IMG/VR virus record: IMGVR_UViG_3300049855_000348
Span: 62,001-126,000 of that record
DNA length: 64,000 nucleotides
Strand: one strand, 5' to 3'
Below are positions 1,041-46,310 of the stretch, piece by piece. Numbering within the stretch: position 1 is the stretch's first letter; each line of letters opens with the position of its first letter. The notes below the pieces were generated by a model, which saw only the letters and a list, made by a program, of their open reading frames with translations, ran no database searches and was not told the origin of the DNA. The position numbers and the translations under genes were made by a program.

Positions 1041-4000
1041 TGTCTCTTCAGGCGAACATCAATGTCCCTGGCCTGATCACGCTGAACTACCCCTACCAAG
1101 GGCAGTCCATCACCAGCCACGTTCGCTTGGCCGGCAACGTCATCATCCCGGACAAGGACAGCCTGCCCGCTGGTACCGATTACCTGATGGAGCAGTTGTC
1201 TCCTGGTGATCAATTGTTGGTCCTGCCGAGCCACGCTCTCTACGGCAAGACCTACAACATCAAGGACATCACCTACTACATGGACGGTGTTGCGGTTCGT
1301 CAGGTGGACTACACCGAAGACGAGATCCGCACCTACCGTTTCAACGATGACTACCTCTCGGTGTTCTACGGTGATGAGATCTCTGAAGGCAATCACGTCT
1401 ACACCATCGTGGTGACGGCCTACTCATCGCAGAACCCTGGCATCATCATCTACGACAGCCTCGAATTGAATTTCGTCTACGATCTGGCCAGCAACAGCAT
1501 CAAGACGATGCTCGATGCCATCACGCCTCAGCCATTCCTTGGTGCTGATGATCACCAGACGATCATGTACGCTTTGGACTACGTCCTCACGAAGCGCACT
1601 GAAGGCTCGCTGAAGACTGACATCGACTTCCTCGGCAGTCTCTACGATCTCGACAAAATCCCCGACTACCTGATCCCGTTCCTCGCCAAGACCATCGGCT
1701 ACGACTACTTCGCTGGTCTCCTCGGCAACGGTGACAGCATTCGTGAAGAACTGCGTTTCCTGCCTGACTGGCAGAAGTCTGTCGGTACCAAGGAAAGCAT
1801 CCTGGTCCTACTGCGTGCCCTGGCCATCTCAGGTAACATCGTTCCGCTCTACCTTGATCTCCAGAACAAGACTTTGGTCACTGGTGCCAAGCAGCGGTAC
1901 TTGCAGACCGACAGCACCAGCTTCCCAGCACAGACCAAACAAGCTCGTTGGACCATTCCACTCGTCCAACAGAACTTCGTCACCACGTCGATCAATCACA
2001 AGATCACGGACGTGGATGGCAACGTGCTGGCCTCCTTCGTGTGGGACATCGTCCTCAATCAAGCCGTGTGGCAGACCTTCGCTGCGGGATGGATCAAGCG
2101 TCCCGACGGCACCAATGCTGATCTGACGGATGTCGAGAGCGTCTACGCCGACAACAACCGTGGCGGCATCACCATCAGCTTCACCAGTGCGCTCAAGATC
2201 GTCGCCACCACCAAGTTCGTCACGACCTACCAGTACGAAGTGGAGACCAAGCCTAGCCGCAACACTCGTCTGTCGGAATTCTTCGACCTCGTGCTCTCTT
2301 CGTTGGAGAAACCGAACGAGAGCAAGACGAAGGATTACCAGCATGCGATGGAGATCGTCAAACGATCGAAGCCGCTACGCACCAAGCTGCGCAACATCAC
2401 CTTCCCAGTGAAGATGGCCGATGCCTTCGTGAGCAACGCTGGCTCCGTTTCATCGACCAACACCTTCAGTAATCCCGATCGAATCAGTGACCAGAACATC
2501 AAGGTCACTGAGGTGAACATGCTGGGCATTCGTGACTCGGTTGGCCTCAGCCACAAGGGTCTGTTCGCCGATGGCTTCCTGTTCTCCTGGGAGATCGACT
2601 GCAACCTGTTCGAGAATCGCTTCGGCATCTACCATTCACTGGCTCTCGATCCTGCGCTCTTCGGGCCGAACTTCCGTGAGATCCTGGCCCGTGATACCTT
2701 GGTGCAGCGTGGTCACGCCATCATGGTGCTCGACGATGAATTACTCGAAGAGAACAAGAAAAGCCTCCTGCGTCGTGTTGATTTCCAGATGCGGAACTTC
2801 ACCACCGAGCCGGCCTGCACGCTGACCACCGACTACCTCGGTCACTACCACACGATCAAGAACAGCATCCCGACCACGCCGGCCTCGGTCACCTTCTCCG
2901 ATCTGCTGATCGAGCTTGACGTTCCCAGCATCAGCCCGGCAGGCTCGGTCACGCTGATCATCGAAGACCCGACCGCAGGCGCTAATCGCACTGGTCGGAC
3001 CTACACCTGGGATGGCGATTCAGGCTTGGTGCAGGGCATCCTCGAAACCGGTGTCACCGGTTCCTTCTCCTTCACCATCGACACCGCCAACCTCAAGACG
3101 ATCGAGGACTCCTACAGCGGTCTCGACTACACCATCACCCTGGTGCGTTGCCCGACCGCCGCAGACGTTGAGGACCTGTACCTCAGCCGTCCGAACCTCC
3201 GGAACATCCAGATCGACCTCAACAAGTGGTATGCGATCTACGACATCACCGGAGACTTCTACGCTGACCCGGTCCACCTGTCGGTCTTCTTCTCGGCGGT
3301 CTACCTCAACCACCAGGGCACCTGCTGCAACTGCGACCTGGACATCGTCACCACCAGCACGCCGGCCACCTTCAACCAGATCCTCGGCAAGACCTACCAG
3401 TTCGGCTACGAGTTCGACCTGGAGATCTATGCCATCTCGACTAACGAGATAGTAGGCGTCTACCACTGGAACAGCCGGCAGTGGATCCCCGTTCTGGTCG
3501 ATTCCGACTTCACCGTGACCCTTTCCCCGGTCAACGGAGGCGTCTGGACCGACGATCTCACCGTGGCTGGCACCATCACCTATGTTGGCGCTGCACCGGC
3601 TGGAATCGCCCAGGAATGGGGAATCCGGGCATGCCCTCGGAAGGTCGGCGACCGCCTCGGCATCGACCTGAACGCCCAGTACACCGACGACTTCGGCTTG
3701 GCCATGGTCCACGGCGGCATGCTGGGGGTCATTGACGAGAGTCAGAGCTTCCTCGACCTGAAGTGGGGCGACCTGATCCCGCACCAGCACGATCAGGGTG
3801 ACCAGCACTTGGCCGCCTTCGACGGGTACTACCTGCGGGGTGGTGTTCTCCTGCCGGCGTTCAGCTACCACGTCACCATGGCCGGCGCTGGGGTGTTCCA
3901 GTGGGACAGCAGCCCGGCGTGGGACAACGGCTTCGCCTGGGACTTCGCCACGCAGTTCCAGTGGGATGTCGACTTCTTCGATGCGATCCAGAAGGTGTGG

Positions 4001-17750: not shown

Positions 17751-18710
17751 TTAGAAAACCTGCTTGCCCAGATCCCCTCCGTTGCCCTGGCTGGCGAAGC
17801 GACCGGCGCGACCCTTCTTCACCGCCTCGGCCTGGGAATCGCTCACCGACAGCGGCTTGCCTTCAGCAGTCCAGATGTCGTTGAAGCACGAGCGCAGAGC
17901 GGTGATCTCGGCCTCATCATCCGAGAAGCGGGTCAGGAACATCGTCCGTGCCGTCTGGAAGGTGTGGACGGCCATGTTCTTGGCCAGATCCAGGAAGGCG
18001 CGGGTCGACACGTCCGAGTGGACGGCCTTGTTCTTCACCGCAGCACGCACCTTGCCGACGAACTGTTCCAGGGCCACCGCATCACGCGGATCGAGCTTGT
18101 CGACCGAGGAGTTGTTGCGCAGCACGGCGATGTCCAGTTCCTGGTGGTAGCCCAACTGGAGTTGGATGGCGAAGCGGTCGCGGAAGGCTTCGTTCATCAC
18201 CCGGACGCCCTCGTAGAAGGGGTTGCCGGCAGCGATCAGGCCGAACTTCTCGTGGGCCACGACGACTTCGGGCTCACCATCAGGACCCGGCTTCTCAGCC
18301 AGGACCAGTTCACGACGGTGGTCGAGCAAACCGTGGATGGCGAACGACACCTCGGGCTTGAGGCTGTTGATCTCGTCGAGCAGACAGACGTGACCGTTGC
18401 GGGCGGCACGGGTCAGGATGCCATCCATCCAGACGTAGCCGACACCGGAGGGGTTGGGGATCCACTGGCCGATCAGGGCTTCACTGGTCGCACCCGTGTG
18501 GCAGGGGATGTAGCAGTATTGCTGATTGAGGCGCAGAGCCACGTCAGCAGCCAGACTCGACTTGCCGGTGCCACGGGGTCCGAGGAGCAGACAGTTCTGC
18601 TTGTTGCGGATGGCGTCGCAGAGGATGTCCACGTCGGTCTTGTCGTGGTACTTGCGGGCGATGTAGGTCGAAACGGCGGGTGCCGGCTTGGTTGCTGTTT
18701 TCGTGGTCAT
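17751..18710 (-). CDS. MoxR/CbbQ/CobS-family AAA+ ATPase
   Basis: Walker A GPRGTGKS, Walker B LLDEIN, sensor AAGNP.YEG, MNEAFRDRF, STR. Confidence 0.92.
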   Translation of the reverse strand: MTTKTATKPAPAVSTYIARKYHDKTDVDILCDAIRNKQNCLLLGPRGTGKSSLAADVALRLNQQYCYIPCHTGATSEALIGQWIPNPSGVGYVWMDGILTRAARNGHVCLLDEINSLKPEVSFAIHGLLDHRRELVLAEKPGPDGEPEVVVAHEKFGLIAAGNPFYEGVRVMNEAFRDRFAIQLQLGYHQELDIAVLRNNSSVDKLDPRDAVALEQFVGKVRAAVKNKAVHSDVSTRAFLDLAKNMAVHTFQTARTMFLTRFSDDEAEITALRSCFNDIWTAEGKPLSVSDSQAEAVKKGRAGRFASQGNGGDLGKQVF

Positions 18711-18774: not shown

Positions 18775-19266
18775 CTATTTCCGGATACCCTGCTTGGCCA
18801 GCCAGCCGGTGAACAATGGGTGTATCTGACGCCTTACCAGCCAGATCCTGATCCGGTAAGAGACTCGAACCGGGATGGTCAGCAGGTAGGTGACCAGGGT
18901 TGCCGCAACGAACACGAAGATCCAGAAGATTCCAATGCAACAGCCGTTCTTTTCAGTCGGGCAGAGACGGGCCAATGATCGCTTGCAATGTACGGAGTGC
19001 TGATGCTGTTGATCCAGGAGGTCAAGGAACTGCCGGTGCAGGACGTTGGACGACTCCAGGTAGCGATACAGTTCACCCTCATCAACTCGGTACGGCGAGA
19101 TCAACACCAATCGTTCGATCTCACAGGCCATTGACGGGATATAATCTTCGATCACTCCGAGCATTGTCATGCGATGGTAGAAATCCATCCGACGCTTCTG
19201 GTTCCAGTTCTCTGGCCAGCCCGCTTCGAGACGGTGTTCCCCTTCGCAATACAAGCACGGCCTCAC
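18775..19266 (-). CDS. Hypothetical membrane protein
   Basis: GTGA overlap start; C-terminal hydrophobic segment. Confidence 0.6.
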   Translation of the reverse strand: MRPCLYCEGEHRLEAGWPENWNQKRRMDFYHRMTMLGVIEDYIPSMACEIERLVLISPYRVDEGELYRYLESSNVLHRQFLDLLDQQHQHSVHCKRSLARLCPTEKNGCCIGIFWIFVFVAATLVTYLLTIPVRVSYRIRIWLVRRQIHPLFTGWLAKQGIRK

Positions 19267-19535
19267 GCTGGTTTGACTTTCCGGGCCATGATGCCCATGG
19301 AGCACAGGAGGAGATCATTAGCTACGGCAACCACTCTTGGCTTCATCTTGCCGAAGATCTTCATGAACTTGTCGTCGTTGGGATTGTCACTCAGCGGGAC
19401 GATCACCATCGCCCTGACCATCGGGTTGATCTGCTGGGTATCGATCTTGACCTTGGTCTTGATCAGAGCGGTGCATCCGGCACGCTCTTTCTCGATCACC
19501 CAGATTGCGGTCAGATCAGCGGACTTTAGTTTCAC
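19263..19535 (-). CDS. Hypothetical protein
   Basis: ORF in an overlapping minus-strand run. Confidence 0.6.
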   Translation of the reverse strand: MKLKSADLTAIWVIEKERAGCTALIKTKVKIDTQQINPMVRAMVIVPLSDNPNDDKFMKIFGKMKPRVVAVANDLLLCSMGIMARKVKPA

Positions 19536-19744: not shown

Positions 19745-20356
19745 ATGGATCTGATCCGCCACACAAATCTCATCGCCGAAGAGCGAGATCCGTCAGCCAG
19801 CTTCCCGACGCCGGAGGAGATCCTGTCGGTCTTGAAGCTCTACCTGAACAAGAAGCAGAACCTGGGCGAACTCCACGACCTGCGGAACCGGCTGCTGGTA
19901 GCTGCCCGTCAACTGCTACGGAACACCATCAAGCTCAACGCCATCGTCGATCGCCCCGACTTCGATCTGCTCATGGCGAAGATGACCGGCCTGAAGAAGC
20001 TCCGTGGCTACTGGGCATCACGGCTGCTCAGTGTCCCTCTGCTGAAGTCAGCAGTCGACCAGTTGACCAAGGCGCAGAATGGTCCTCAGCTTGCCCTGGC
20101 CATTGCCCGTCTAACCGGTGTGGTCGAGAACGCCGAAGACACCATCCCAGCGCCAACCAAGACGTTCCTCGACTCCGGTGACGACACCTACAACTCGATC
20201 TACAAGTACCTGACCAAGATCGATGGCTGGAACGAGGCACGAGTCGATGAGTTCAACACCGCATTGCGGAACTTGCGTGATCGGTTAGTACAGCAAATGG
20301 CAGCGAAGATCACTGCTGCCAAGACACTGAAAGCGCCGAGGCCGGCAGGGTGGTAG
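19745..20356 (+). CDS. Hypothetical helical protein (late-type motif upstream)
   Basis: TAGATAA lies 4 nt before ATG 19745. Confidence 0.75.
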   Translation: MDLIRHTNLIAEERDPSASFPTPEEILSVLKLYLNKKQNLGELHDLRNRLLVAARQLLRNTIKLNAIVDRPDFDLLMAKMTGLKKLRGYWASRLLSVPLLKSAVDQLTKAQNGPQLALAIARLTGVVENAEDTIPAPTKTFLDSGDDTYNSIYKYLTKIDGWNEARVDEFNTALRNLRDRLVQQMAAKITAAKTLKAPRPAGW

Positions 20357-22821: not shown

Positions 22822-23088
22822 TTATGCGAGACGAAGAAGTGGACGATAGCTGTTGAGAGAAGGGGCCACACCACATGGTGTTGCCCGATACTCCTCGACC
22901 GCTTTCTTCCACACACGTTCGGCACGGTCAGCCGCACCAGATGCGCGAGCCAGGAGAACGAGGTTTGCTTCCCTGTTCTCTTCGTCCTCTACACACAGAC
23001 TACGAAGGTCACATTCGAGGGCGATAGCCTCGACCATTGCCTTGCGCAGCGGGTGATTGGGAAGAGTTGGATCAGACGGTTTGAACAT
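22822..23088 (-). CDS. Hypothetical protein, leaderless
   Basis: ATG is 6 nt after TATATT. Confidence 0.7.
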   Translation of the reverse strand: MFKPSDPTLPNHPLRKAMVEAIALECDLRSLCVEDEENREANLVLLARASGAADRAERVWKKAVEEYRATPCGVAPSLNSYRPLLRLA

Positions 23089-23094
23089 GCCAAC

Positions 23095-23122
23095 AATATA
23101 GCGACCATTTAGTCTAAGTCAA
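23095..23122 (-). promoter_or_regulatory. Repeated promoter, copy 8
   Basis: TTGACT-TAGACTAAATGGTCGC-TATATT-GTTGGC-ATG. Confidence 0.85.
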
Positions 23123-23158
23123 GAAGGATCCAGTAGCAGATCTGATCTCGATCGCAAT

Positions 23159-23449
23159 CGGTCAATGAGCCTTCTTTCCGAAGCACCACACCAACCAATC
23201 CTCATTCAGTCACGGTCGCTCGGTGGGGTGTGTCCACTCCGCTCTTATGACCTCCATCAGATTCGTACCCCACCACCCTTGCGAGGGATGGGTTTCCAGC
23301 AACGCGAAGCTGGTCTGCAAAGCGGCTCCTTACCAGAAAACCCCACGAGTGTCGGCGTTACCCGTTACACTGTGAGGTTTCCTGATGGTCTTTCGACCGT
23401 AGGGCGAACCGGTATTATTCGGTTTGCCTCCACCATCCATGATTGACCG
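23159..23449 (-). ncRNA. Unclassified ~290-nt structured RNA
   Basis: Ends pair (CGGTCAAT/ATTGACCG); 15-bp stem with G-U pairs specific to the minus strand; GGTC-GAAA-GACC hairpin; multi-way junction; no credible ORF. Confidence 0.65.
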
Positions 23450-23461
23450 CATGGCCGGTTG

Positions 23462-23837
23462 TGGTGGACGCGCCCGGAATCGAACCGGGGTCCAAGAGAT
23501 CTTCTTTCTGTGTGCTCTACCAAGAATATGAGGTGTTTCTGTCCTCCAACCTAGTTGGTCTTTTCTCGATGACCTACACTCGTCTGCGTTGTTCTTTCGT
23601 GCCTTACCCGCAGCGGGAAAGCCCTAGCGTCCGGCCTATGGTACCAGGGTGCGACCGGCGACGGCCCTGGGGTTGTTGGTGCAGCGTCTAGCTGCCTGAT
23701 TGCTCAGGCGGCGAGTGCGATGCGACCGTACTCGACGTGATCGTCGGGTATTTTTTTACGGGTTTTTTAGGTGGACTCCCGCACCACCTCTTGGCTCACC
23801 CTGATGTCTGTTCTCCTGTCGAGACCTGTTCGCGCCC
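23462..23837 (-). ncRNA. ssrA: tmRNA (one-piece), tag (A)DDHVEYGRIALAA
   Basis: Acceptor stem GGGCGCG/CGCGTCC with G3-U70 and encoded ACCA; T-arm CCCGG-TTCGATT-CCGGG; pk1 AGGTGG/CCACCT plus TGCGGG/CCCGTA; tag ORF at 23704-23745. Confidence 0.95.
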
Positions 23838-23852
23838 ACATGAACTGATTGT

Positions 23853-23890
23853 AAAAGAGACCACCGGGCGCTCGGTGCGTACCGGTGGTC
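23853..23890 (-). terminator. Terminator-like hairpin immediately upstream of tmRNA
   Basis: GACCACCGG...CCGGTGGTC followed by TCTTTT. Confidence 0.6.
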
Positions 23891-24195
23891 GGAATCTCGT
23901 TGGTTCGTCGTGCGTGTCAACCGATGGTTAGGTCAATGTCGCATGTCGTCCTTTCTTTTTGGTGCGCTGTCCGAGGTCGCGCCTACCTGTCGTCTCTCCG
24001 TTTTTTTTCTTACCGCCAGATCAGCTTGGGGGATTGGCCTTACGCTGTCGTCGCAGCACATAGTACGCATGTGTTGTGTGTGTATTCAATGCATTGGAAC
24101 CTCCTTCTTTGTTTTACGTAAGGCACCTTCTCAGTCGGTCAGGTTGGGGGTTGTCCTTACCCTGGGCTCCGTGAGTCGGCAGATCATCGTTGCGG
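23891..24195 (-). ncRNA. Structured leader / small RNA containing two minigenes
   Basis: Duplicated hairpin motif CAG(G/C)GTAAGG..CCCCCAA(C/G)CTG; SD-ATG-CAT-TGA at 24086-24094; SD-ATG-CGA-CAT-TGA at 23933-23944. Confidence 0.5.
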
Positions 24196-24200
24196 CGATA

Positions 24201-24228
24201 TTTATAGCGACCATTTGGTCTATGTCAA
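24201..24228 (-). promoter_or_regulatory. Repeated promoter, copy 9 (drives the ncRNA cluster)
   Basis: TTGACA-TAGACCAAATGGTCGC-TATAAA. Confidence 0.85.
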
Positions 24229-25988
24229 ACAATTTGTGGAACGCCGGCTTCTGCGAGTCGTGATTTTCCGATCGTCCTGACCTTGATGCCCAGTGTACCG
24301 AGAAACGGCATCAGGTGACGGTAGTTGCGCACGATCTTCGGGAAGTTCTGGTCGATCTCTGAAACCTTGGTCTCTTTGTAGAATCGTGGCTGCTGTGGTG
24401 AGTAGTCATGACCACAACCAGCGAGCAGGATGTCCTTGGCTCCAGCCCACACAGCGACCTGAATGGCCACCCAGACGATCGAGTAACCATGGAAGATGCC
24501 ACGGGTGAGGTCGGAGCAGAAACCCTCATGGCCGATGGTCTTGATGTACGAAGCATCGCAGTTGCCAGGAAGGAATGGACGAACCACCGAGTTGTAGATC
24601 TTCAGACCACACGCCTTGATGGCGATCTCTTTCTTCTCTGGAACATCGAGGAAACGCTTGTCGCCGATGCAATACACATCGAACGGGATACCGAGTTTCA
24701 TCGCAGCGTTGGTGCCGATGTTCTTGGCGTTTGGGTAGAGTCCAACCGCTTCAAGTGCTGTTGGTCCATTTCCCCAGATCACCACCTGCTGATCTTTCCA
24801 TTGCCCGAACAGTTCAAGCACGGCGGGCTGGATCTTCTCCGGCACGAGGTACGGAGAGGCGAGACGCTGGAAACCTCCCCACTGACGGAAATAGGTTTTC
24901 TCTTTCACTGGTGGAGTGATGGGACTCTGACCGGTGGTGACTTGCTCATAAACATCGGTGAAGTGTCTGACCAGTCGATTGGGATTCCAGTTGTTCTCCA
25001 TCCACGAACGACCGTCAATTTTCAACTTCTCCACCAGATCTGGATTGGCGGCGAGATTGCGCAGTGTGGCTTCGAGTTCGTGCTGCTGCGTGTTCACCCA
25101 TGGCAGGGTGGTGTCGTATCCAACGATCTGACGGATGGCATCCTTCGTCTGATCATCAATCCAGCCGATGGTGACCAGACCCTGGCTGAGAGCTTCCAAC
25201 GAACAGAGATGGTAGCCACCAGTGACGCACTCGTCGATGCAGACATCGTGCTGTTGTTTGATGGGCATCAACTCTTCCCAACGCTTGTCGGTGATGAGTG
25301 TGTACTCGATGAGCCCTTCGGCCTGCAATTTCTTCAGGACAGCGTTGACGGTGGAATAGCCCTTGCCGCAGCAGGTGTTGGTGTAGATGGCGTAGGACTT
25401 CAGATCGCTTGGTGTGTAGATGACCTTCAGTTTGCTGTGCTTCGCCAGCATCGGCATCAGGCGTGTGTCGTAGATGTCGATCATGTTCGGAACTGGCGTG
25501 CTCTTGGGATAGAAGCGAACATGCTTCTGAGCGATGACCAGCGTGCGAATGTCATCACGATTCACCACATCACGCTTATAAGCCTTCTGGAGGAGTGATG
25601 GTTCGGTGTGGTACTGGAGGACTTTGTATTTCTCCCGCAGCAAGTGCTTGAACGGAGCCATCTCAGGCGATTCGTGATCCACCCAGTTGTGAAAGTGAAT
25701 CACATCAGCCTTGCTGATGAGGTGCTTCACTTCGTGGACTTGATGCAGGAAGACATCGTGCTGAAACTTCCGACCGTTGGTGGTGTCACTGGCGGTGACC
25801 GTCCGGCAGGTGTGTGACGTGTACTTGTTGATGGCGTCATGGATGCGCCAGATCGCCCCGGCACAGTTGGTCCGAGAGATCTGAAGGATCAGTTTTCCTT
25901 CCGCCTTGTTGATTGCCGGGGCGGCGTTCTGCAACTCGGGAAAGGATGAGTTATCCATCGGGATCAGTTCGACTGGGTAGTTGGTCAT
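24225..25988 (-). CDS. Two-domain glycosyltransferase (GT-B-like plus DUF115/MAF-like domain)
   Basis: KGY and GYHLCSLEALSQG (GT-B); C-terminal IWGNGP..IGTN..AIQVAVWAGAKDILLAGC. Confidence 0.75.
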   Translation of the reverse strand: MTNYPVELIPMDNSSFPELQNAAPAINKAEGKLILQISRTNCAGAIWRIHDAINKYTSHTCRTVTASDTTNGRKFQHDVFLHQVHEVKHLISKADVIHFHNWVDHESPEMAPFKHLLREKYKVLQYHTEPSLLQKAYKRDVVNRDDIRTLVIAQKHVRFYPKSTPVPNMIDIYDTRLMPMLAKHSKLKVIYTPSDLKSYAIYTNTCCGKGYSTVNAVLKKLQAEGLIEYTLITDKRWEELMPIKQQHDVCIDECVTGGYHLCSLEALSQGLVTIGWIDDQTKDAIRQIVGYDTTLPWVNTQQHELEATLRNLAANPDLVEKLKIDGRSWMENNWNPNRLVRHFTDVYEQVTTGQSPITPPVKEKTYFRQWGGFQRLASPYLVPEKIQPAVLELFGQWKDQQVVIWGNGPTALEAVGLYPNAKNIGTNAAMKLGIPFDVYCIGDKRFLDVPEKKEIAIKACGLKIYNSVVRPFLPGNCDASYIKTIGHEGFCSDLTRGIFHGYSIVWVAIQVAVWAGAKDILLAGCGHDYSPQQPRFYKETKVSEIDQNFPKIVRNYRHLMPFLGTLGIKVRTIGKSRLAEAGVPQIV

Positions 25989-26018: not shown

Positions 26019-26690
26019 ATGACCACACTCCGATCCGCCAAAGAACTCTGGTCCGACGCCCAGCCCGCCCGGCCTTGTTTGATCATGGGGAACTCCCCCA
26101 GCCTGGATCTCTACAAGGACGAGACCTACGACCAGTTCTTCACCATCGGCTGCAATTCCCGCCTGCACACCCGGTACACTCCCGATCTGACCATGATGAT
26201 CGACCGGAACATACCAACACCCGATCCTGAGGCTGATCTGGTCTCACAGATCCCCCATTGGCAACAGAGTCATCCAGGGACGGTCTACAAGTTCCAACTC
26301 GGCCTGCGACTCCAGTTCCACCCCGATCTGAGTTCTGACAAGATCGACTATTCGATCACCAGTCCGTACATGGCCATCTGCCTCGCCTATCTTATGGGAT
26401 GGCGCAGCTTCACTCTCATCGGGATCGACCTGGGCATGGTCGACGGGAAGAACTACCATGACGACAAGGAGAAAGCTCCCATCGTCACCCGTCCTGGCTT
26501 CGTGCTCGGACCCGATGGCAAGGAGATCCCCGACCCCCTCAACACTCGGCGTCGCTTCCTCGCTGCGTGCTACAATCACCTCAGCTACCTCATCAACAAG
26601 ATGAGCACGTACCACAACTGCCGTTTCTTCTCGCTCTCGCCCTACTCGCAGTTGCTTCAAAACGGTAACGTCAAGAAAGTCACGCTGTGA
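26019..26690 (+). CDS. DUF115/MAF-like (sialyltransferase-like) putative glycosyltransferase
   Basis: CLIMGNSPSL, TIGCN, AICLAYLMG..FTLIGIDL. Confidence 0.7.
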   Translation: MTTLRSAKELWSDAQPARPCLIMGNSPSLDLYKDETYDQFFTIGCNSRLHTRYTPDLTMMIDRNIPTPDPEADLVSQIPHWQQSHPGTVYKFQLGLRLQFHPDLSSDKIDYSITSPYMAICLAYLMGWRSFTLIGIDLGMVDGKNYHDDKEKAPIVTRPGFVLGPDGKEIPDPLNTRRRFLAACYNHLSYLINKMSTYHNCRFFSLSPYSQLLQNGNVKKVTL

Positions 26691-44090: not shown

Positions 44091-46310
44091 TCACATGCTC
44101 ACGACGGTACGTTCGGTTTCCGTAGCTTCCCCTGGGGAACCAACCACTCGAATCCGCTGGATGTAGCGTCGGAATGTGGGAACAAATTGGAAAGGAAGGC
44201 CAAGATAGGCTTCCAACTGAACTACCAGGGAACCCTTGACCGTACGTTCGGCATCGCCGTTTTCGACGTTGTGACTGTAGGAACGCAGCCAGAGAGGGAA
44301 GATTTCCTGGGGAACCGGCTGTGCGCCGACGAAATCAAGGGGATAGGCCATCTTCAGGTAGGAGAGGCCACCGTGGTGGTGGAAACGCTGAAGGATGGTA
44401 CCGATGGAGTAACGAAGGTCCTCCTCGAACTCGGCATAGACCTCGACAGCATAGGTCAGCTTCCAAGGAGAAGGCTTCGAGAAACGTGCGGCCCGGCGAG
44501 CCTGTTCCCGAGGTCCATCGTACAGCACACCAACGTAGGATTCTGGTGGGTGGTAGCGGTCACCGTTGTATTCCACCTGCTGAAGACGCAGCGTCACTAC
44601 CGGCTGTTTGGCACGCTCGTTACGCGCATCATCACCCTTCAGAGCTTTGATGGCGCGGATCGCCTTCTCACCACCGGCATACTCGACGCGGAATTCCAGG
44701 GAATGGCTATCATCGCGGGGTGTTTTGATCGTCCGGAACCAGTCAACAAAGGCTTTCTCATACGACAAGAAAGCCGGGATGAAGGGAATCACCTTCTCGT
44801 ATTGTTGAATGGCTGCCATAGCTTCTTCGTCCTCTTCTATGTAGACAGCCTCGGCGATCACAACAGGCGCAGAAATCTTGATCGAAGGGAAACTTACGCT
44901 GGTTGAGGCTGTGCCGGTTGCCGTGCCGGTTGGTGGTGTGACGGTGATGGTGCCGATGTCGCCGTTGCCATGAACGGTGACCAACACGTCGACCGTCGGA
45001 GCGTCCAAGACGACGGTTGCCAGAGATCCGGAGGTATTGGCCGAACCGGTTCCCTGTGCATCAATTGCAACAATTTGAACGGTACCGATGAGTGATGTCG
45101 CCGATGCCCCAGCCGTGGTGTCGGCTGTGGGTGCGGTGACGTTCACCGTGCTCAGGTTGCCAGAGGCGTTTGCAGAGCCTGTGGCGGACGATGTCGGTGC
45201 CGAGGTGGTGATGGTACCAATCGAGACCGAAACGGTCACGCCGGCACTGACAGTGGCCGTTGGGGCGATGACGACGACTGCCGGCAGCGAGGCGGTTCCT
45301 GTACCGTTGCCGGTGCCGGTCACCGTCGGTGAGGTAACCGTTACGGTGCTCAGGTTTCCAGAAGCAACGACGCTGACACTGCCCTGTGCCGTCGGAGCCG
45401 ACACGTTGACGGTGTTGAGGTTGCCGTTTACCGAAGCGGCACCAGTCGCCGATGCCGTCGGAGCGGTGACGGTGACCGTCGATAGCGAAGCAGAGGCAGT
45501 CGCTTTTCCGGTCGCCGATGCCGTCGGTGCGGTGACAGTGACCGTACCAATATCACCCGATGCACTGCCGGTTCCAGTTGTCGACGCCGATGCCGTCGGA
45601 GCGGTGACGGTGACCGTACCGATCGAGGTGTCAGTGTTTGCTGCACCAGTGGCTGAGGCAGTTGGCGTCGAAACGGTGACCGTGCTGATCGAGGCACTGA
45701 CATTCGCAGTGCCCGTCGCCGAAGCGGTCGGAGCCGAGACGGTGACGGTGTTGATTGAGGCATCGACAGCAGCAGCACCCGTCGCCGAAGCGGTTGGCGC
45801 GGTGACAGTGATGGTACCAATCGAAACGTCGACAGCAGTAGATCCAGCAGCCGAGGCGGTCGGGGTCGAGAGAGTGACGGTGCCAATCGAGGCATCAACG
45901 TTTGCGGTACCGGTCGCCGAAGCTGTTGGAGCCGTGACAGTGACGGTACTGATTGAGACATCAGCGATAGCAGATCCAGCAGCCGAAGCTGTTGGTGCGG
46001 TGACGGTGACCGTGCTGATCGAGGTATTGACATTCGCAGCACCGGTCGCCGAGGCTGTTGGAGCCGAGACGGTGACCGTGCTGATCGAAGTATCGACGTT
46101 CGCTGCACCGGTTGCTGAAGCGGTTGGTGCGGTGACGGTGACCGTACCAATCGAAGTATTGACAGCGGCAGATCCAGTCGCCGAAACAGTTGGTGCAGAA
46201 ACTACTACGGTACCGATATTACCAGATGCAACAGCGTCGGTACTGCCACTTCCGAAGAAGTTGCTGGCGAAGTGGTCGCTACCGAAGTGATTCCCATTCA
46301 GATAGCCCAT
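44091..46310 (-). CDS. Thr/Ala/Ser/Val repeat protein fused to a gp15-like tail-terminator domain
   Basis: About 20 x 22-aa repeats (SIGTVTVTAPTASATGAA..); C-terminal P..W.L.Y...VYA...DL.....IL.RF. Confidence 0.65.
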   Translation of the reverse strand: MGYLNGNHFGSDHFASNFFGSGSTDAVASGNIGTVVVSAPTVSATGSAAVNTSIGTVTVTAPTASATGAANVDTSISTVTVSAPTASATGAANVNTSISTVTVTAPTASAAGSAIADVSISTVTVTAPTASATGTANVDASIGTVTLSTPTASAAGSTAVDVSIGTITVTAPTASATGAAAVDASINTVTVSAPTASATGTANVSASISTVTVSTPTASATGAANTDTSIGTVTVTAPTASASTTGTGSASGDIGTVTVTAPTASATGKATASASLSTVTVTAPTASATGAASVNGNLNTVNVSAPTAQGSVSVVASGNLSTVTVTSPTVTGTGNGTGTASLPAVVVIAPTATVSAGVTVSVSIGTITTSAPTSSATGSANASGNLSTVNVTAPTADTTAGASATSLIGTVQIVAIDAQGTGSANTSGSLATVVLDAPTVDVLVTVHGNGDIGTITVTPPTGTATGTASTSVSFPSIKISAPVVIAEAVYIEEDEEAMAAIQQYEKVIPFIPAFLSYEKAFVDWFRTIKTPRDDSHSLEFRVEYAGGEKAIRAIKALKGDDARNERAKQPVVTLRLQQVEYNGDRYHPPESYVGVLYDGPREQARRAARFSKPSPWKLTYAVEVYAEFEEDLRYSIGTILQRFHHHGGLSYLKMAYPLDFVGAQPVPQEIFPLWLRSYSHNVENGDAERTVKGSLVVQLEAYLGLPFQFVPTFRRYIQRIRVVGSPGEATETERTVVSM

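What the first reader, a model, noticed from the sequence alone, without database searches (positions are those of the whole stretch)
23853..24200. Leader with twin RNA motifs, two minigenes ending CAT-TGA, and a terminator gating tmRNA
Seen in sequence (minus strand), after promoter copy 9: hairpin CAGG-GTAAGGACAACCCCCAA-CCTG, then AAGAAGGAGG-N5-ATG CAT TGA (24086-24094). Next is a second hairpin CAGC-GTAAGGCCAATCCCCCAA-GCTG, with a compensatory G-C to C-G change, then AAGAAAGGA-N4-ATG CGA CAT TGA (23933-23944). A GC-rich hairpin with a U-tract then ends about 15 nt before the tmRNA. An internal GCCTTACG can pair with either GTAAGG loop, allowing alternative folds. Established: SD-led minigenes such as lambda bar cause peptidyl-tRNA drop-off and tRNA sequestration. 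Inference: a translation-stress sensor (His-tRNA or RF2 availability) that controls read-through into tmRNA and the unknown RNA, or a ribosome/tRNA-sponging small RNA. Together these would form an RNA-only translation-control operon.
Basis: partly seen in the sequence, partly recalled or inferred. Interest (0 to 1): 0.85.

Follow-up and report, generated by a model that had tools for sequence, protein, structure and literature searches.

The report
Phage tmRNA leader with shared hairpins
An uncultured 220-kb phage transcribes its own tmRNA behind a ~340-nt leader that holds two copies of a conserved RNA hairpin (also scattered through the phage's tRNA array), two tiny ribosome-binding ORFs and a conserved terminator; it is real and partly new, but it is not the histidine or stress sensor first proposed.

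Summary
The window comes from a 220,489-bp uncultured phage with terminal repeats. Three related metagenomic phages keep the same leader plan: promoter, hairpin, SD-led mini-ORF, hairpin, SD-led mini-ORF, terminator, tmRNA.

Three parts of the interpretation fail.
- The twin hairpin is not specific to tmRNA. The genome holds six more copies in its tRNA array, some replacing the anticodon arm of tRNA-like RNAs. Relatives carry it at matching array positions. Stem covariation is clear across 20 copies.
- The CAT-TGA ending is not conserved. One relative has MSRRR* and MNITRK* at the same two start sites, so only SD, ATG, shortness and TGA persist.
- The GCCTTACG alternative pairing is not conserved.

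The terminator is conserved in all seven relatives with different stem sequences, including four that lack hairpins and mini-ORFs. No conserved promoter lies behind it.

My reading is a stable-RNA operon leader. tmRNA is made by read-through of a conserved terminator. The leader carries a lineage-specific cassette: a new structured hairpin module, perhaps for antitermination or factor binding, plus ribosome-loading mini-ORFs. The function is inferred, not shown.

The parts
24201..24228 (-). Stereotyped phage promoter (TTGACA, 16-nt spacer with GACC-N4-GGTC, TATAAA). The transcript start is inferred near 24194.
   Evidence: about 39 copies genome-wide, most placing an ATG 6 nt after the -10 (leaderless mRNAs). 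This copy instead runs into non-coding sequence. It is conserved in L019 and L020.
24130..24175 (-). Hairpin module copy 1. Outer helix CTCA/TGAG (24175-24172 with 24133-24130), inner stem CAGG/CCTG (24164-24161 with 24143-24140), conserved loop 24160-24144.
   Evidence: The outer helix is also present in L019 copy 1 and in array copy 5.
24117..24124 (-). GCCTTACG, complementary to the GTAAGG part of both loops (9 bp with copy 2 in the minimum-energy fold).
   Evidence: One search shows the pairing in this sequence. It is not conserved: L020 has a deletion that leaves 6 bp, and L019 has no equivalent at this place.
24086..24109 (-). SD AAGAAGGAGG (24109-24100), 5-nt spacer, mini-ORF 1 ATG CAT TGA (24094-24086).
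   Evidence: L020 is identical. L019 has GGAGG-N5-ATG at the aligned place with a 5-codon ORF, MSRRR*.
24022..24047 (-). Hairpin module copy 2: stem CAGC/GCTG and an 18-nt conserved loop (24043-24026).
   Evidence: This is the best hit of model R1 at 43.8 bits. Array copy 6 has the same stem.
23964..23983 (-). Small GC hairpin (GGCGC...GCGC) between hairpin 2 and the second SD.
   Evidence: conserved in position, with the stem GGCGCT/AGCGCC in L019.
23933..23957 (-). SD AAGAAAGGA (23957-23949), 4-nt spacer, mini-ORF 2 ATG CGA CAT TGA (23944-23933).
   Evidence: L019 has GGAGG-N5-ATG within 2 nt of the same place (measured from the invariant GTTGACACG), with a 6-codon ORF, MNITRK*.
23913..23921 (-). 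GTTGACACG, invariant in the three hairpin-bearing leaders. Role unknown; no -10 follows it.
23853..23890 (-). Intrinsic-terminator-like hairpin (GACCACCGG / CCGGTGGTC) plus TCTTTT, ending 15 nt before tmRNA.
   Evidence: An equivalent hairpin plus U-tract precedes tmRNA in all seven related sequences, with different stem sequences.
23462..23837 (-). tmRNA, tag DDHVEYGRIALAA.
   Evidence: The same tag is found in relatives.
23322..23440 (-). Conserved trailer element: invariant TGGTGGAGG, a small hairpin, GGTC-GNRA-GACC, then a second terminator.
   Evidence: 5 sequences, 10 pairs with compensatory changes. The tetraloop varies between GAAA, GCAA and GUAA.

Best explanation
The region is the 5' leader of a phage stable-RNA transcription unit. 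A strong stereotyped promoter (24228-24201) starts a non-coding RNA of about 340 nt that ends at a conserved intrinsic terminator (23890-23853). tmRNA is made from transcripts that read through this terminator and is then cut out, presumably by RNase P at its 5' end.

Inside the leader sits a lineage-specific cassette of about 230 nt. It holds two copies of a structured hairpin module: a short covarying stem, a 4x4 internal loop GYAA/CYAR, a GG/CC pair and a variable apical loop. Each copy is followed by a strong ribosome-binding site with an ATG and a 2-6 codon ORF.

The hairpin is a general building block of this phage lineage's stable RNAs. It occurs in the tRNA array and in tRNA-like RNAs, and it is not a tmRNA-specific ligand sensor. 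It most probably serves as a docking or recognition element for RNA polymerase or for a factor acting on these untranslated transcripts. My leading guess is terminator read-through; processing is the second.

The mini-ORFs most probably act by loading ribosomes on an otherwise untranslated RNA, which would protect it from 5' decay or Rho. They do not act through their peptides or a particular codon.

Shown: the anatomy, its conservation, the stem covariation, and the spread of the module. Inferred: the transcript start, read-through, translation of the mini-ORFs, and every functional role.
For: - Anatomy and tmRNA.
- The promoter family drives mostly leaderless genes.
- The same leader plan occurs in L020 and L019, whose flanking proteins are 89% and 84% identical.
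- A terminator hairpin plus U-tract precedes tmRNA in 7 of 7 relatives, with different stems.
- TACAAT lacks a -35 and is CACAAC in L020.
- Hairpin module: 8 copies in the genome and none elsewhere in it; 10 more in the tRNA arrays of two relatives at matching places. All copies lie on the strand of the RNA genes. In the 20-copy alignment 85.7% of cells are paired, covariation is 0.405 against 0.135 in shuffles (0 of 500 reach it), and slid controls give 0.18 or less.
- A parallel layout exists at the tRNA array: promoter, module-bearing RNA, strong conserved terminator, then tRNAs without an evident promoter.
- Each of the three leaders has exactly two SD-ATG sites, each opening a 2-6 codon ORF that ends in TGA.
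- A metatranscriptome holds a 100%-identical 182-nt contig on 23901-24082.
Against: - There is no direct transcript-end, termination or ribosome data. The RNA-library contig could come from contaminating DNA, and tmRNA itself was not covered in that run.
- Only three lineages carry the leader cassette, so its conservation is shallow.
- Four relatives keep the terminator and tmRNA without hairpins or mini-ORFs. The cassette is therefore dispensable for tmRNA expression in them.
- Most array copies lie downstream of the array terminator, which an antitermination role does not require.
- A weak promoter behind the terminator cannot be excluded.
Confidence: 0.55

Rival explanations
1. Translation of the mini-ORFs senses His-tRNA or RF2 availability, and ribosome position decides, through alternative RNA folds, whether the terminator forms and tmRNA is made.
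For: SD-led mini-ORFs lie upstream of a conserved terminator, and all end in TGA. In this sequence GCCTTACG can pair with either loop.
Against: - The last sense codons differ between lineages: CAT/CAT against CGA/AAG. ORF lengths also differ: 2 and 3 codons against 5 and 6.
- TGA ends 66% of the phage's long ORFs, so four TGA stops are not informative.
- The stop codons lie 42 nt (window) and 32 nt (L019) before the terminator stem, out of reach of a terminating ribosome.
- No antiterminator helix is conserved between the window and L019.
- The GCCTTACG pairing is not conserved.
- The same hairpins occur in the tRNA array without mini-ORFs.
Confidence: 0.08
2. The leader is an independent small RNA of about 340 nt that ends at the terminator. 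It works in trans as a ribosome or tRNA sponge: lambda bar-like minigenes cause peptidyl-tRNA drop-off, or strong SD sites titrate 30S subunits, which could favour the phage's leaderless mRNAs.
For: - Strong promoter, very strong SD and 2-3 codon ORFs.
- A terminator directly after them.
- The phage's own mRNAs are mostly leaderless.
- The leader was recovered from an RNA library while tmRNA was not.
- Minigene-type tRNA sequestration is established (PMC2490762).
Against: - The phage encodes no Pth or other recognised partner.
- In L019 the ORFs have 5-6 codons and different last codons, so no particular tRNA is targeted.
- tmRNA needs a transcript source, and no conserved promoter follows the terminator.
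- Relatives without the cassette keep the promoter-terminator-tmRNA order.
Confidence: 0.15
3. The hairpin module is a cis-acting antitermination signal. It would be like HK022 put RNA, acting on RNA polymerase directly, or like a nut/boxB site for a phage protein. It would let polymerase pass the terminators that guard the tmRNA and tRNA genes.
For: - Two loci share the order promoter, module-bearing RNA, strong terminator, stable-RNA genes without an evident promoter.
- The modules come as pairs 87-119 nt apart.
- put RNAs are two stem-loops placed downstream of early promoters and upstream of terminators (PMC9378689).
Against: - No sequence or Rfam similarity to known antitermination RNAs.
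- Five of the six array copies lie beyond the array terminator, several inside tRNA-like RNAs.
- The L021-L024 relatives pass the same kind of terminator without the module.
Confidence: 0.2
4. The cassette is a drifting duplicate of a tRNA-array segment with no function of its own, and the mini-ORFs are accidents.
For: The stems of leader copy 2 and array copy 6 are identical, and the outer helix of copy 1 resembles that of array copy 5. Four relatives do without the cassette.
Against: - Between the window and L019 the flanks have diverged, yet the hairpin cores, both SD-ATG sites and their spacing are kept.
- Two SD-led mini-ORFs in 360 nt is far above the genome-wide rate.
- A DNA variant from another sample has 5 changes, all outside the hairpin and the mini-ORF.
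Confidence: 0.07

Closest known systems
Lambda bar-type minigenes
   Same: A strong Shine-Dalgarno sequence, an ATG, one or two sense codons and a stop, all in a phage transcript. Such units cause peptidyl-tRNA drop-off (established; see PMC2490762).
   Different: Here the sense codons and ORF length are not conserved between relatives. No Pth-related gene is present. The units sit in the leader of a tmRNA gene, and toxicity or drop-off is untested.
HK022 put RNA and other processive antitermination signals
   Same: Paired stem-loops in the nascent RNA just downstream of a phage promoter and upstream of terminators that precede needed genes (PMC9378689).
   Different: There is no sequence resemblance. 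The two hairpins are about 117 nt apart rather than forming one 70-nt unit. Copies also occur deep in the tRNA array and inside tRNA-like RNAs. Activity is untested.
STAB-SD and ribosome-dependent 5' stabilisers (B. thuringiensis cryIIIA, B. subtilis hbs)
   Same: A polypurine SD-like sequence in an untranslated leader that binds ribosomes and blocks 5' exonuclease (PMC5737220, PMC4113751, PMC3997798).
   Different: Here each SD is followed by a real ATG and stop. The host and its RNases are unknown, and stabilisation is untested.
Ribosome-mediated attenuators (trp, his, pyrBI leaders)
   Same: A short leader ORF upstream of an intrinsic terminator that precedes the regulated gene.
   Different: There are no regulatory codon runs, no conserved alternative hairpins and no overlap between ORF and terminator. 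The regulated product is an RNA.
Phage-encoded tmRNA and tRNA arrays in large phages
   Same: Huge phages commonly carry tmRNA and many tRNAs (PMC7162821).
   Different: I found no description of a structured leader, mini-ORFs or a shared hairpin module upstream of a phage tmRNA. Rfam 15 has no matching family.

Membership tests
tmRNA (RF00023) | Match to the covariance model over its gathering score, plus a tag reading frame | tested here: met
   97.4 bits against a cut-off of 47, full length 1-374. ARAGORN gives the tag DDHVEYGRIALAA.
Intrinsic terminator | GC-rich hairpin directly followed by a U-tract | tested here: met
   9-bp stem plus TCTTTT. The equivalent is present in 7 of 7 relatives with different stem sequences.
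Intrinsic terminator | Actually stops RNA polymerase in vivo | not testable with these tools
   Only assembled contigs of a metatranscriptome were available.
bar-type minigene | SD, ATG, 1-2 sense codons and a stop | tested here: met
   ATG CAT TGA and ATG CGA CAT TGA behind strong SDs.
bar-type minigene | Conserved last sense codon that defines the sequestered tRNA | tested here: not met
   CAT/CAT here and in L020, but CGA and AAG in L019.
bar-type minigene | Peptidyl-tRNA drop-off and Pth-dependent toxicity | not testable with these tools
The phage has no Pth gene.
Ribosome-mediated attenuator | Leader ORF overlapping mutually exclusive antiterminator and terminator helices | tested here: not met
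   The stops lie 42 and 32 nt before the terminator stem. No alternative helix is shared by the window and L019.
Ribosome-mediated attenuator | Conserved regulatory codons in the leader peptide | tested here: not met
   MH*/MRH* against MSRRR*/MNITRK*.
Any Rfam 15 family (riboswitches, put-like RNAs, sRNAs, ribozymes) | Covariance-model match to the leader or to the hairpin | tested here: not met
   Only tmRNA and tRNAs were found at E up to 10 in the leader and up to 1 in the array.
HK022 put-type antitermination RNA | Nascent-RNA stem-loops between promoter and terminator | tested here: inconclusive
   The layout fits at two loci, but copies also lie elsewhere, and relatives lack the module upstream of the same terminator.
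HK022 put-type antitermination RNA | Binding to RNA polymerase and terminator read-through | not testable with these tools
   Needs in vitro transcription or reporter assays.
Structured RNA hairpin module (proposed here) | Base pairs kept through compensatory changes | tested here: met
   20 copies, 5 stem pairs with changes on both sides, 23 such cells. No shuffle out of 500 reaches the covariation score or the percentage paired. The alignment was fitted to the model, which favours the structure. The independent MAFFT alignment of 12 copies gives the same picture.

The most novel reading that the evidence does not exclude
The conserved hairpin is a previously undescribed cis-acting RNA signal of phage stable-RNA operons. 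By binding RNA polymerase or a phage factor, it would license read-through of the strong terminators that guard both the tmRNA and the 25-tRNA array. The ribosome-loaded mini-ORFs of the tmRNA leader would tune this, so the phage's supply of ribosome-rescue RNA would be set by an RNA-only control region.
Probability: 0.2. Interest if true: 0.8.

Novelty: new variant of a known kind. Interest (0 to 1): 0.6.

Why it matters
Phage tmRNAs are widely annotated, but how they are expressed is essentially unknown. This case shows a conserved layout in which a terminator sits between the only recognisable promoter and tmRNA. The phage's tRNA array has the same layout.

A structured RNA module not present in Rfam is shared by both loci and by odd tRNA-like RNAs. 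This gives concrete, mutable elements for testing how large phages control their own translation-related RNAs: two hairpins, two SD-ATG sites and one terminator.

The work also removes an attractive but wrong idea, the His or tRNA sensor.

Tried and rejected
- **Rfam.** Gathering and permissive thresholds on the window, the leader and the tRNA array gave only tmRNA and tRNAs.
- **Exact and degenerate motif scans.** IMG/VR returned 15 and then 10 hits, all single, none near a tRNA and mostly inside long ORFs, so they are chance. A stricter stem-plus-loop pattern gave 0 hits in IMG/VR and 0 in 185,579 species genomes.
- **Promoter and tag scans.** The promoter pattern in IMG/VR and the tmRNA tag-coding pattern in IMG/VR and JGI metagenomes each gave 0 hits. 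GenBank phages gave no DNA match and only one 27%-identical protein match. One of my own promoter patterns had a wrong spacer and found nothing; it was corrected.
- **NAD+ riboswitch resemblance.** Copy 1 contains ACAACCCC, which I recalled from memory as the ACANCCCC bulge. I rejected this: the other copies do not keep it and Rfam gives no hit.
- **CsrA-type GGA sites.** Rejected, because GGA is not conserved in the loop.
- **Loop-to-downstream pseudoknot (GTAAGG with CCTTAC).** The changes in L020 are not compensatory, and L019 lacks the partner.
- **Long-range leader-trailer pairing.** Not better than shuffles.
- **A third minigene, ATG GGG TGA, between array copies 5 and 6.** Not conserved in L036 or L037.
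- **CGA-codon enrichment in the mini-ORFs.** Confounded by frequent GACGAC strings in the leader.
- **Phage-encoded Pth or SmpB.** None found.
- **Records of relatives.** They could not be searched as whole records, and several relatives had no retrievable DNA.

Full report
**Source and observation**

The window is bases 62001-126000 of a 220,489-bp virus record with direct terminal repeats, judged complete. GC content is 56%. ARAGORN and Rfam both call a full-length tmRNA at 23837-23462, at 97 bits, with the tag DDHVEYGRIALAA.

The loop pattern shared by the two hairpins occurs twice in the window, against none expected in shuffles. The promoter TTGACA-N16-TATAAA at 24228-24201 belongs to a family of about 39 near-identical promoters in the genome. 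Most of them place an ATG six bases after the -10 element, which implies leaderless mRNAs. This copy instead opens onto about 1.1 kb without a plausible gene. That stretch holds the leader, the tmRNA and a trailer, and runs up to the next promoter at 23122.

**Relatives**

DNA searches of GenBank phages, IMG/VR and JGI metagenome contigs found nothing. The 587-aa protein that ends at the promoter has homologues in a larger protein collection, and DNA around seven of them could be fetched.

L020 (89% protein identity) and L019 (84%) carry the same leader plan. L021-L025 (61-64%) have the promoter remnant, a variable hairpin of about 50 nt, a terminator-like hairpin and then tmRNA. They have no twin hairpins and no mini-ORFs. 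The hairpin plus mini-ORF cassette of about 230 nt is therefore specific to one sub-lineage, while the promoter-terminator-tmRNA order is older.

**The terminator**

In all seven sequences a GC-rich hairpin followed by a U-tract lies 21-41 nt upstream of the tmRNA 5' end. The stems differ in sequence but stay paired.

The other clade has unrelated sequence there. The simplest reading is that tmRNA comes from read-through of a partial terminator, followed by processing. This is an inference. The only expression evidence is a 100%-identical 182-nt contig on 23901-24082, and another on 23060-23322, in a sediment metatranscriptome. That is contig-level evidence and could reflect DNA carry-over.

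**The mini-ORFs**

Each of the three cassette-bearing leaders has exactly two SD-N4-8-ATG sites, at aligned positions, each opening a tiny ORF that ends in TGA. The window and L020 have MH* and MRH*. L019 has MSRRR* and MNITRK*.

Genome-wide such SD-led ORFs of six codons or fewer number 15, against 8 in reversed sequence, so two within 360 nt is not expected by chance. What is conserved is the ribosome-binding geometry and the shortness, not the peptide, the codons or the length. This removes the His-codon hypothesis.

TGA ends 323 of 490 long ORFs, so the shared TGA carries little weight. The stops lie 42 nt (window) and 32 nt (L019) before the terminator stem, and I found no competing helix shared by the two lineages. 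A classical ribosome-controlled attenuator is therefore not supported. The phage encodes no Pth and no SmpB.

**The twin hairpin**

A looser search showed that the loop G-Y-AAGG, a variable stretch, then CCCC-(Y)-A-R is not confined to the leader. Six more copies lie on the plus strand at 17.9-20.4 kb of the genome, inside an array of at least 25 tRNA genes.

A covariance model built from 12 copies finds these 8 copies in the genome and nothing else in it. It also finds five copies each in the tRNA arrays of two relatives, at matching positions. Every copy is on the strand of the neighbouring RNA genes.

On 20 copies, 85.7% of cells pair. All five stem pairs show changes on both sides, in 23 cells. 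No shuffle out of 500 reaches the covariation score, and slid controls collapse. The unfitted 12-copy alignment agrees. The minimum-energy folds give a short stem, a 4x4 internal loop, a GG/CC pair and a variable apical loop.

Several array copies take the place of the anticodon arm in tRNA-like RNAs that have a 6-7 bp acceptor stem, a T-arm and a 3' ACCA. The tRNA finders do not call these RNAs. The array copies have no conserved mini-ORF.

**A parallel at the tRNA array**

In L037 a stereotyped promoter is followed by a module-bearing tRNA-like RNA, then about 300 nt of highly conserved sequence, then a strong terminator that is nearly identical in three phages. After that come the tRNAs, with no evident promoter. 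This is the same order as at tmRNA.

It suggests, without proving, that the module helps polymerase pass these terminators, as HK022 put RNA does (PMC9378689). Against this, most array copies lie beyond the terminator, and the L021 clade manages without the module.

**Conclusion**

The architecture is real and conserved. The terminator in front of tmRNA is the most robust feature. The twin hairpin is a new, covarying RNA module of this lineage's stable RNAs rather than a tmRNA-specific sensor. The mini-ORFs are conserved as ribosome-binding sites, not as codon sensors.

The most likely working model is a read-through-limited stable-RNA operon. Its leader carries recognition hairpins and ribosome-loading sites, comparable to ribosome-dependent stabilisers (PMC5737220, PMC3997798) or to minigenes (PMC2490762). 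All functional steps remain inferred.

Noticed in passing
Whole genome; in the window e.g. 7524, 15083, 23122, 31645, 55641 (minus strand): About 39 copies of one promoter (TTGACTTAGACC, a short A/T stretch, GGTCGCTATACT), most followed after 6 nt by ATG. This implies that much of the phage is expressed as leaderless mRNAs. The spacer holds an inverted repeat GACC-N4-GGTC that could be an operator.
   Followed up: partly
G000:C1:18490-23010 (locus L026 1492-6007), outside the window: An array of at least 25 tRNA genes (26 by Rfam) on the plus strand, interrupted by HNH-like ORFs. Relatives L036 (28 tRNAs) and L037 carry arrays in the same order.
   Followed up: partly
L026 859-1009, 2135-2212, 2224-2297, 3258-3340 (G000 17858-18008, 19134-19211, 19223-19296, 20257-20339): tRNA-like RNAs not called by ARAGORN or Rfam. 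They have an acceptor stem, usually a TTCGATT T-loop and a 3' ACCA, but the hairpin module stands where the anticodon arm should be. One (3258-3340) has a G3-U70 pair like tRNA-Ala and tmRNA, and its 3' end is GTCCACCA, the same as tmRNA.
   Followed up: partly
window 23322-23440 (minus strand): A conserved structured element right after tmRNA: invariant TGGTGGAGG (complementary to the tmRNA 3' end TCCACCA), a small hairpin, a GGTC-GNRA-GACC hairpin with a varying tetraloop, then a terminator. It is present in 5 relatives and absent in L023.
   Followed up: partly
window 23123-23321 (minus strand): A further 200 nt of apparently non-coding sequence between the second terminator and the next promoter. 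A metatranscriptome contig covers 23060-23322 at 100% identity.
   Followed up: no
L026 1010-1300; L036 6560-6850; L037 3950-4225: About 300 nt between the first module-bearing RNA and the array terminator are very highly conserved in three phages. The only ORFs listed there (110 aa from GTG, 84 aa) overlap the tRNA-like RNA. It may be another structured RNA or a small gene.
   Followed up: no
L026 1309-1338; L036 6853-6881; L037 4230-4258: A strong, nearly identical terminator (11-12 bp stem, then TTCTTTTTC) stands directly upstream of the tRNA array in three phages, with no evident promoter behind it.
   Followed up: partly
window 44929-46253: A long run of 66-nt tandem repeats at 60-75% identity. 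It is probably a repeated 22-residue unit in a structural protein gene.
   Followed up: no
window 24228-25988 (minus) and 26019-26687 (plus): Both proteins next to the leader give weak hits to the MptE-like family PF01973, below its cut-off. The 587-aa protein has 73 homologues in metagenomes, many of them 800-900 aa long.
   Followed up: no
L019 2860-3236 and L023: ARAGORN does not call the tmRNA in L019, L020 (cut by the contig end) or L023, although the aligned sequences look intact and carry the same tag frame. L019 also has about 130 extra nt between tmRNA and the trailer element.
   Followed up: no
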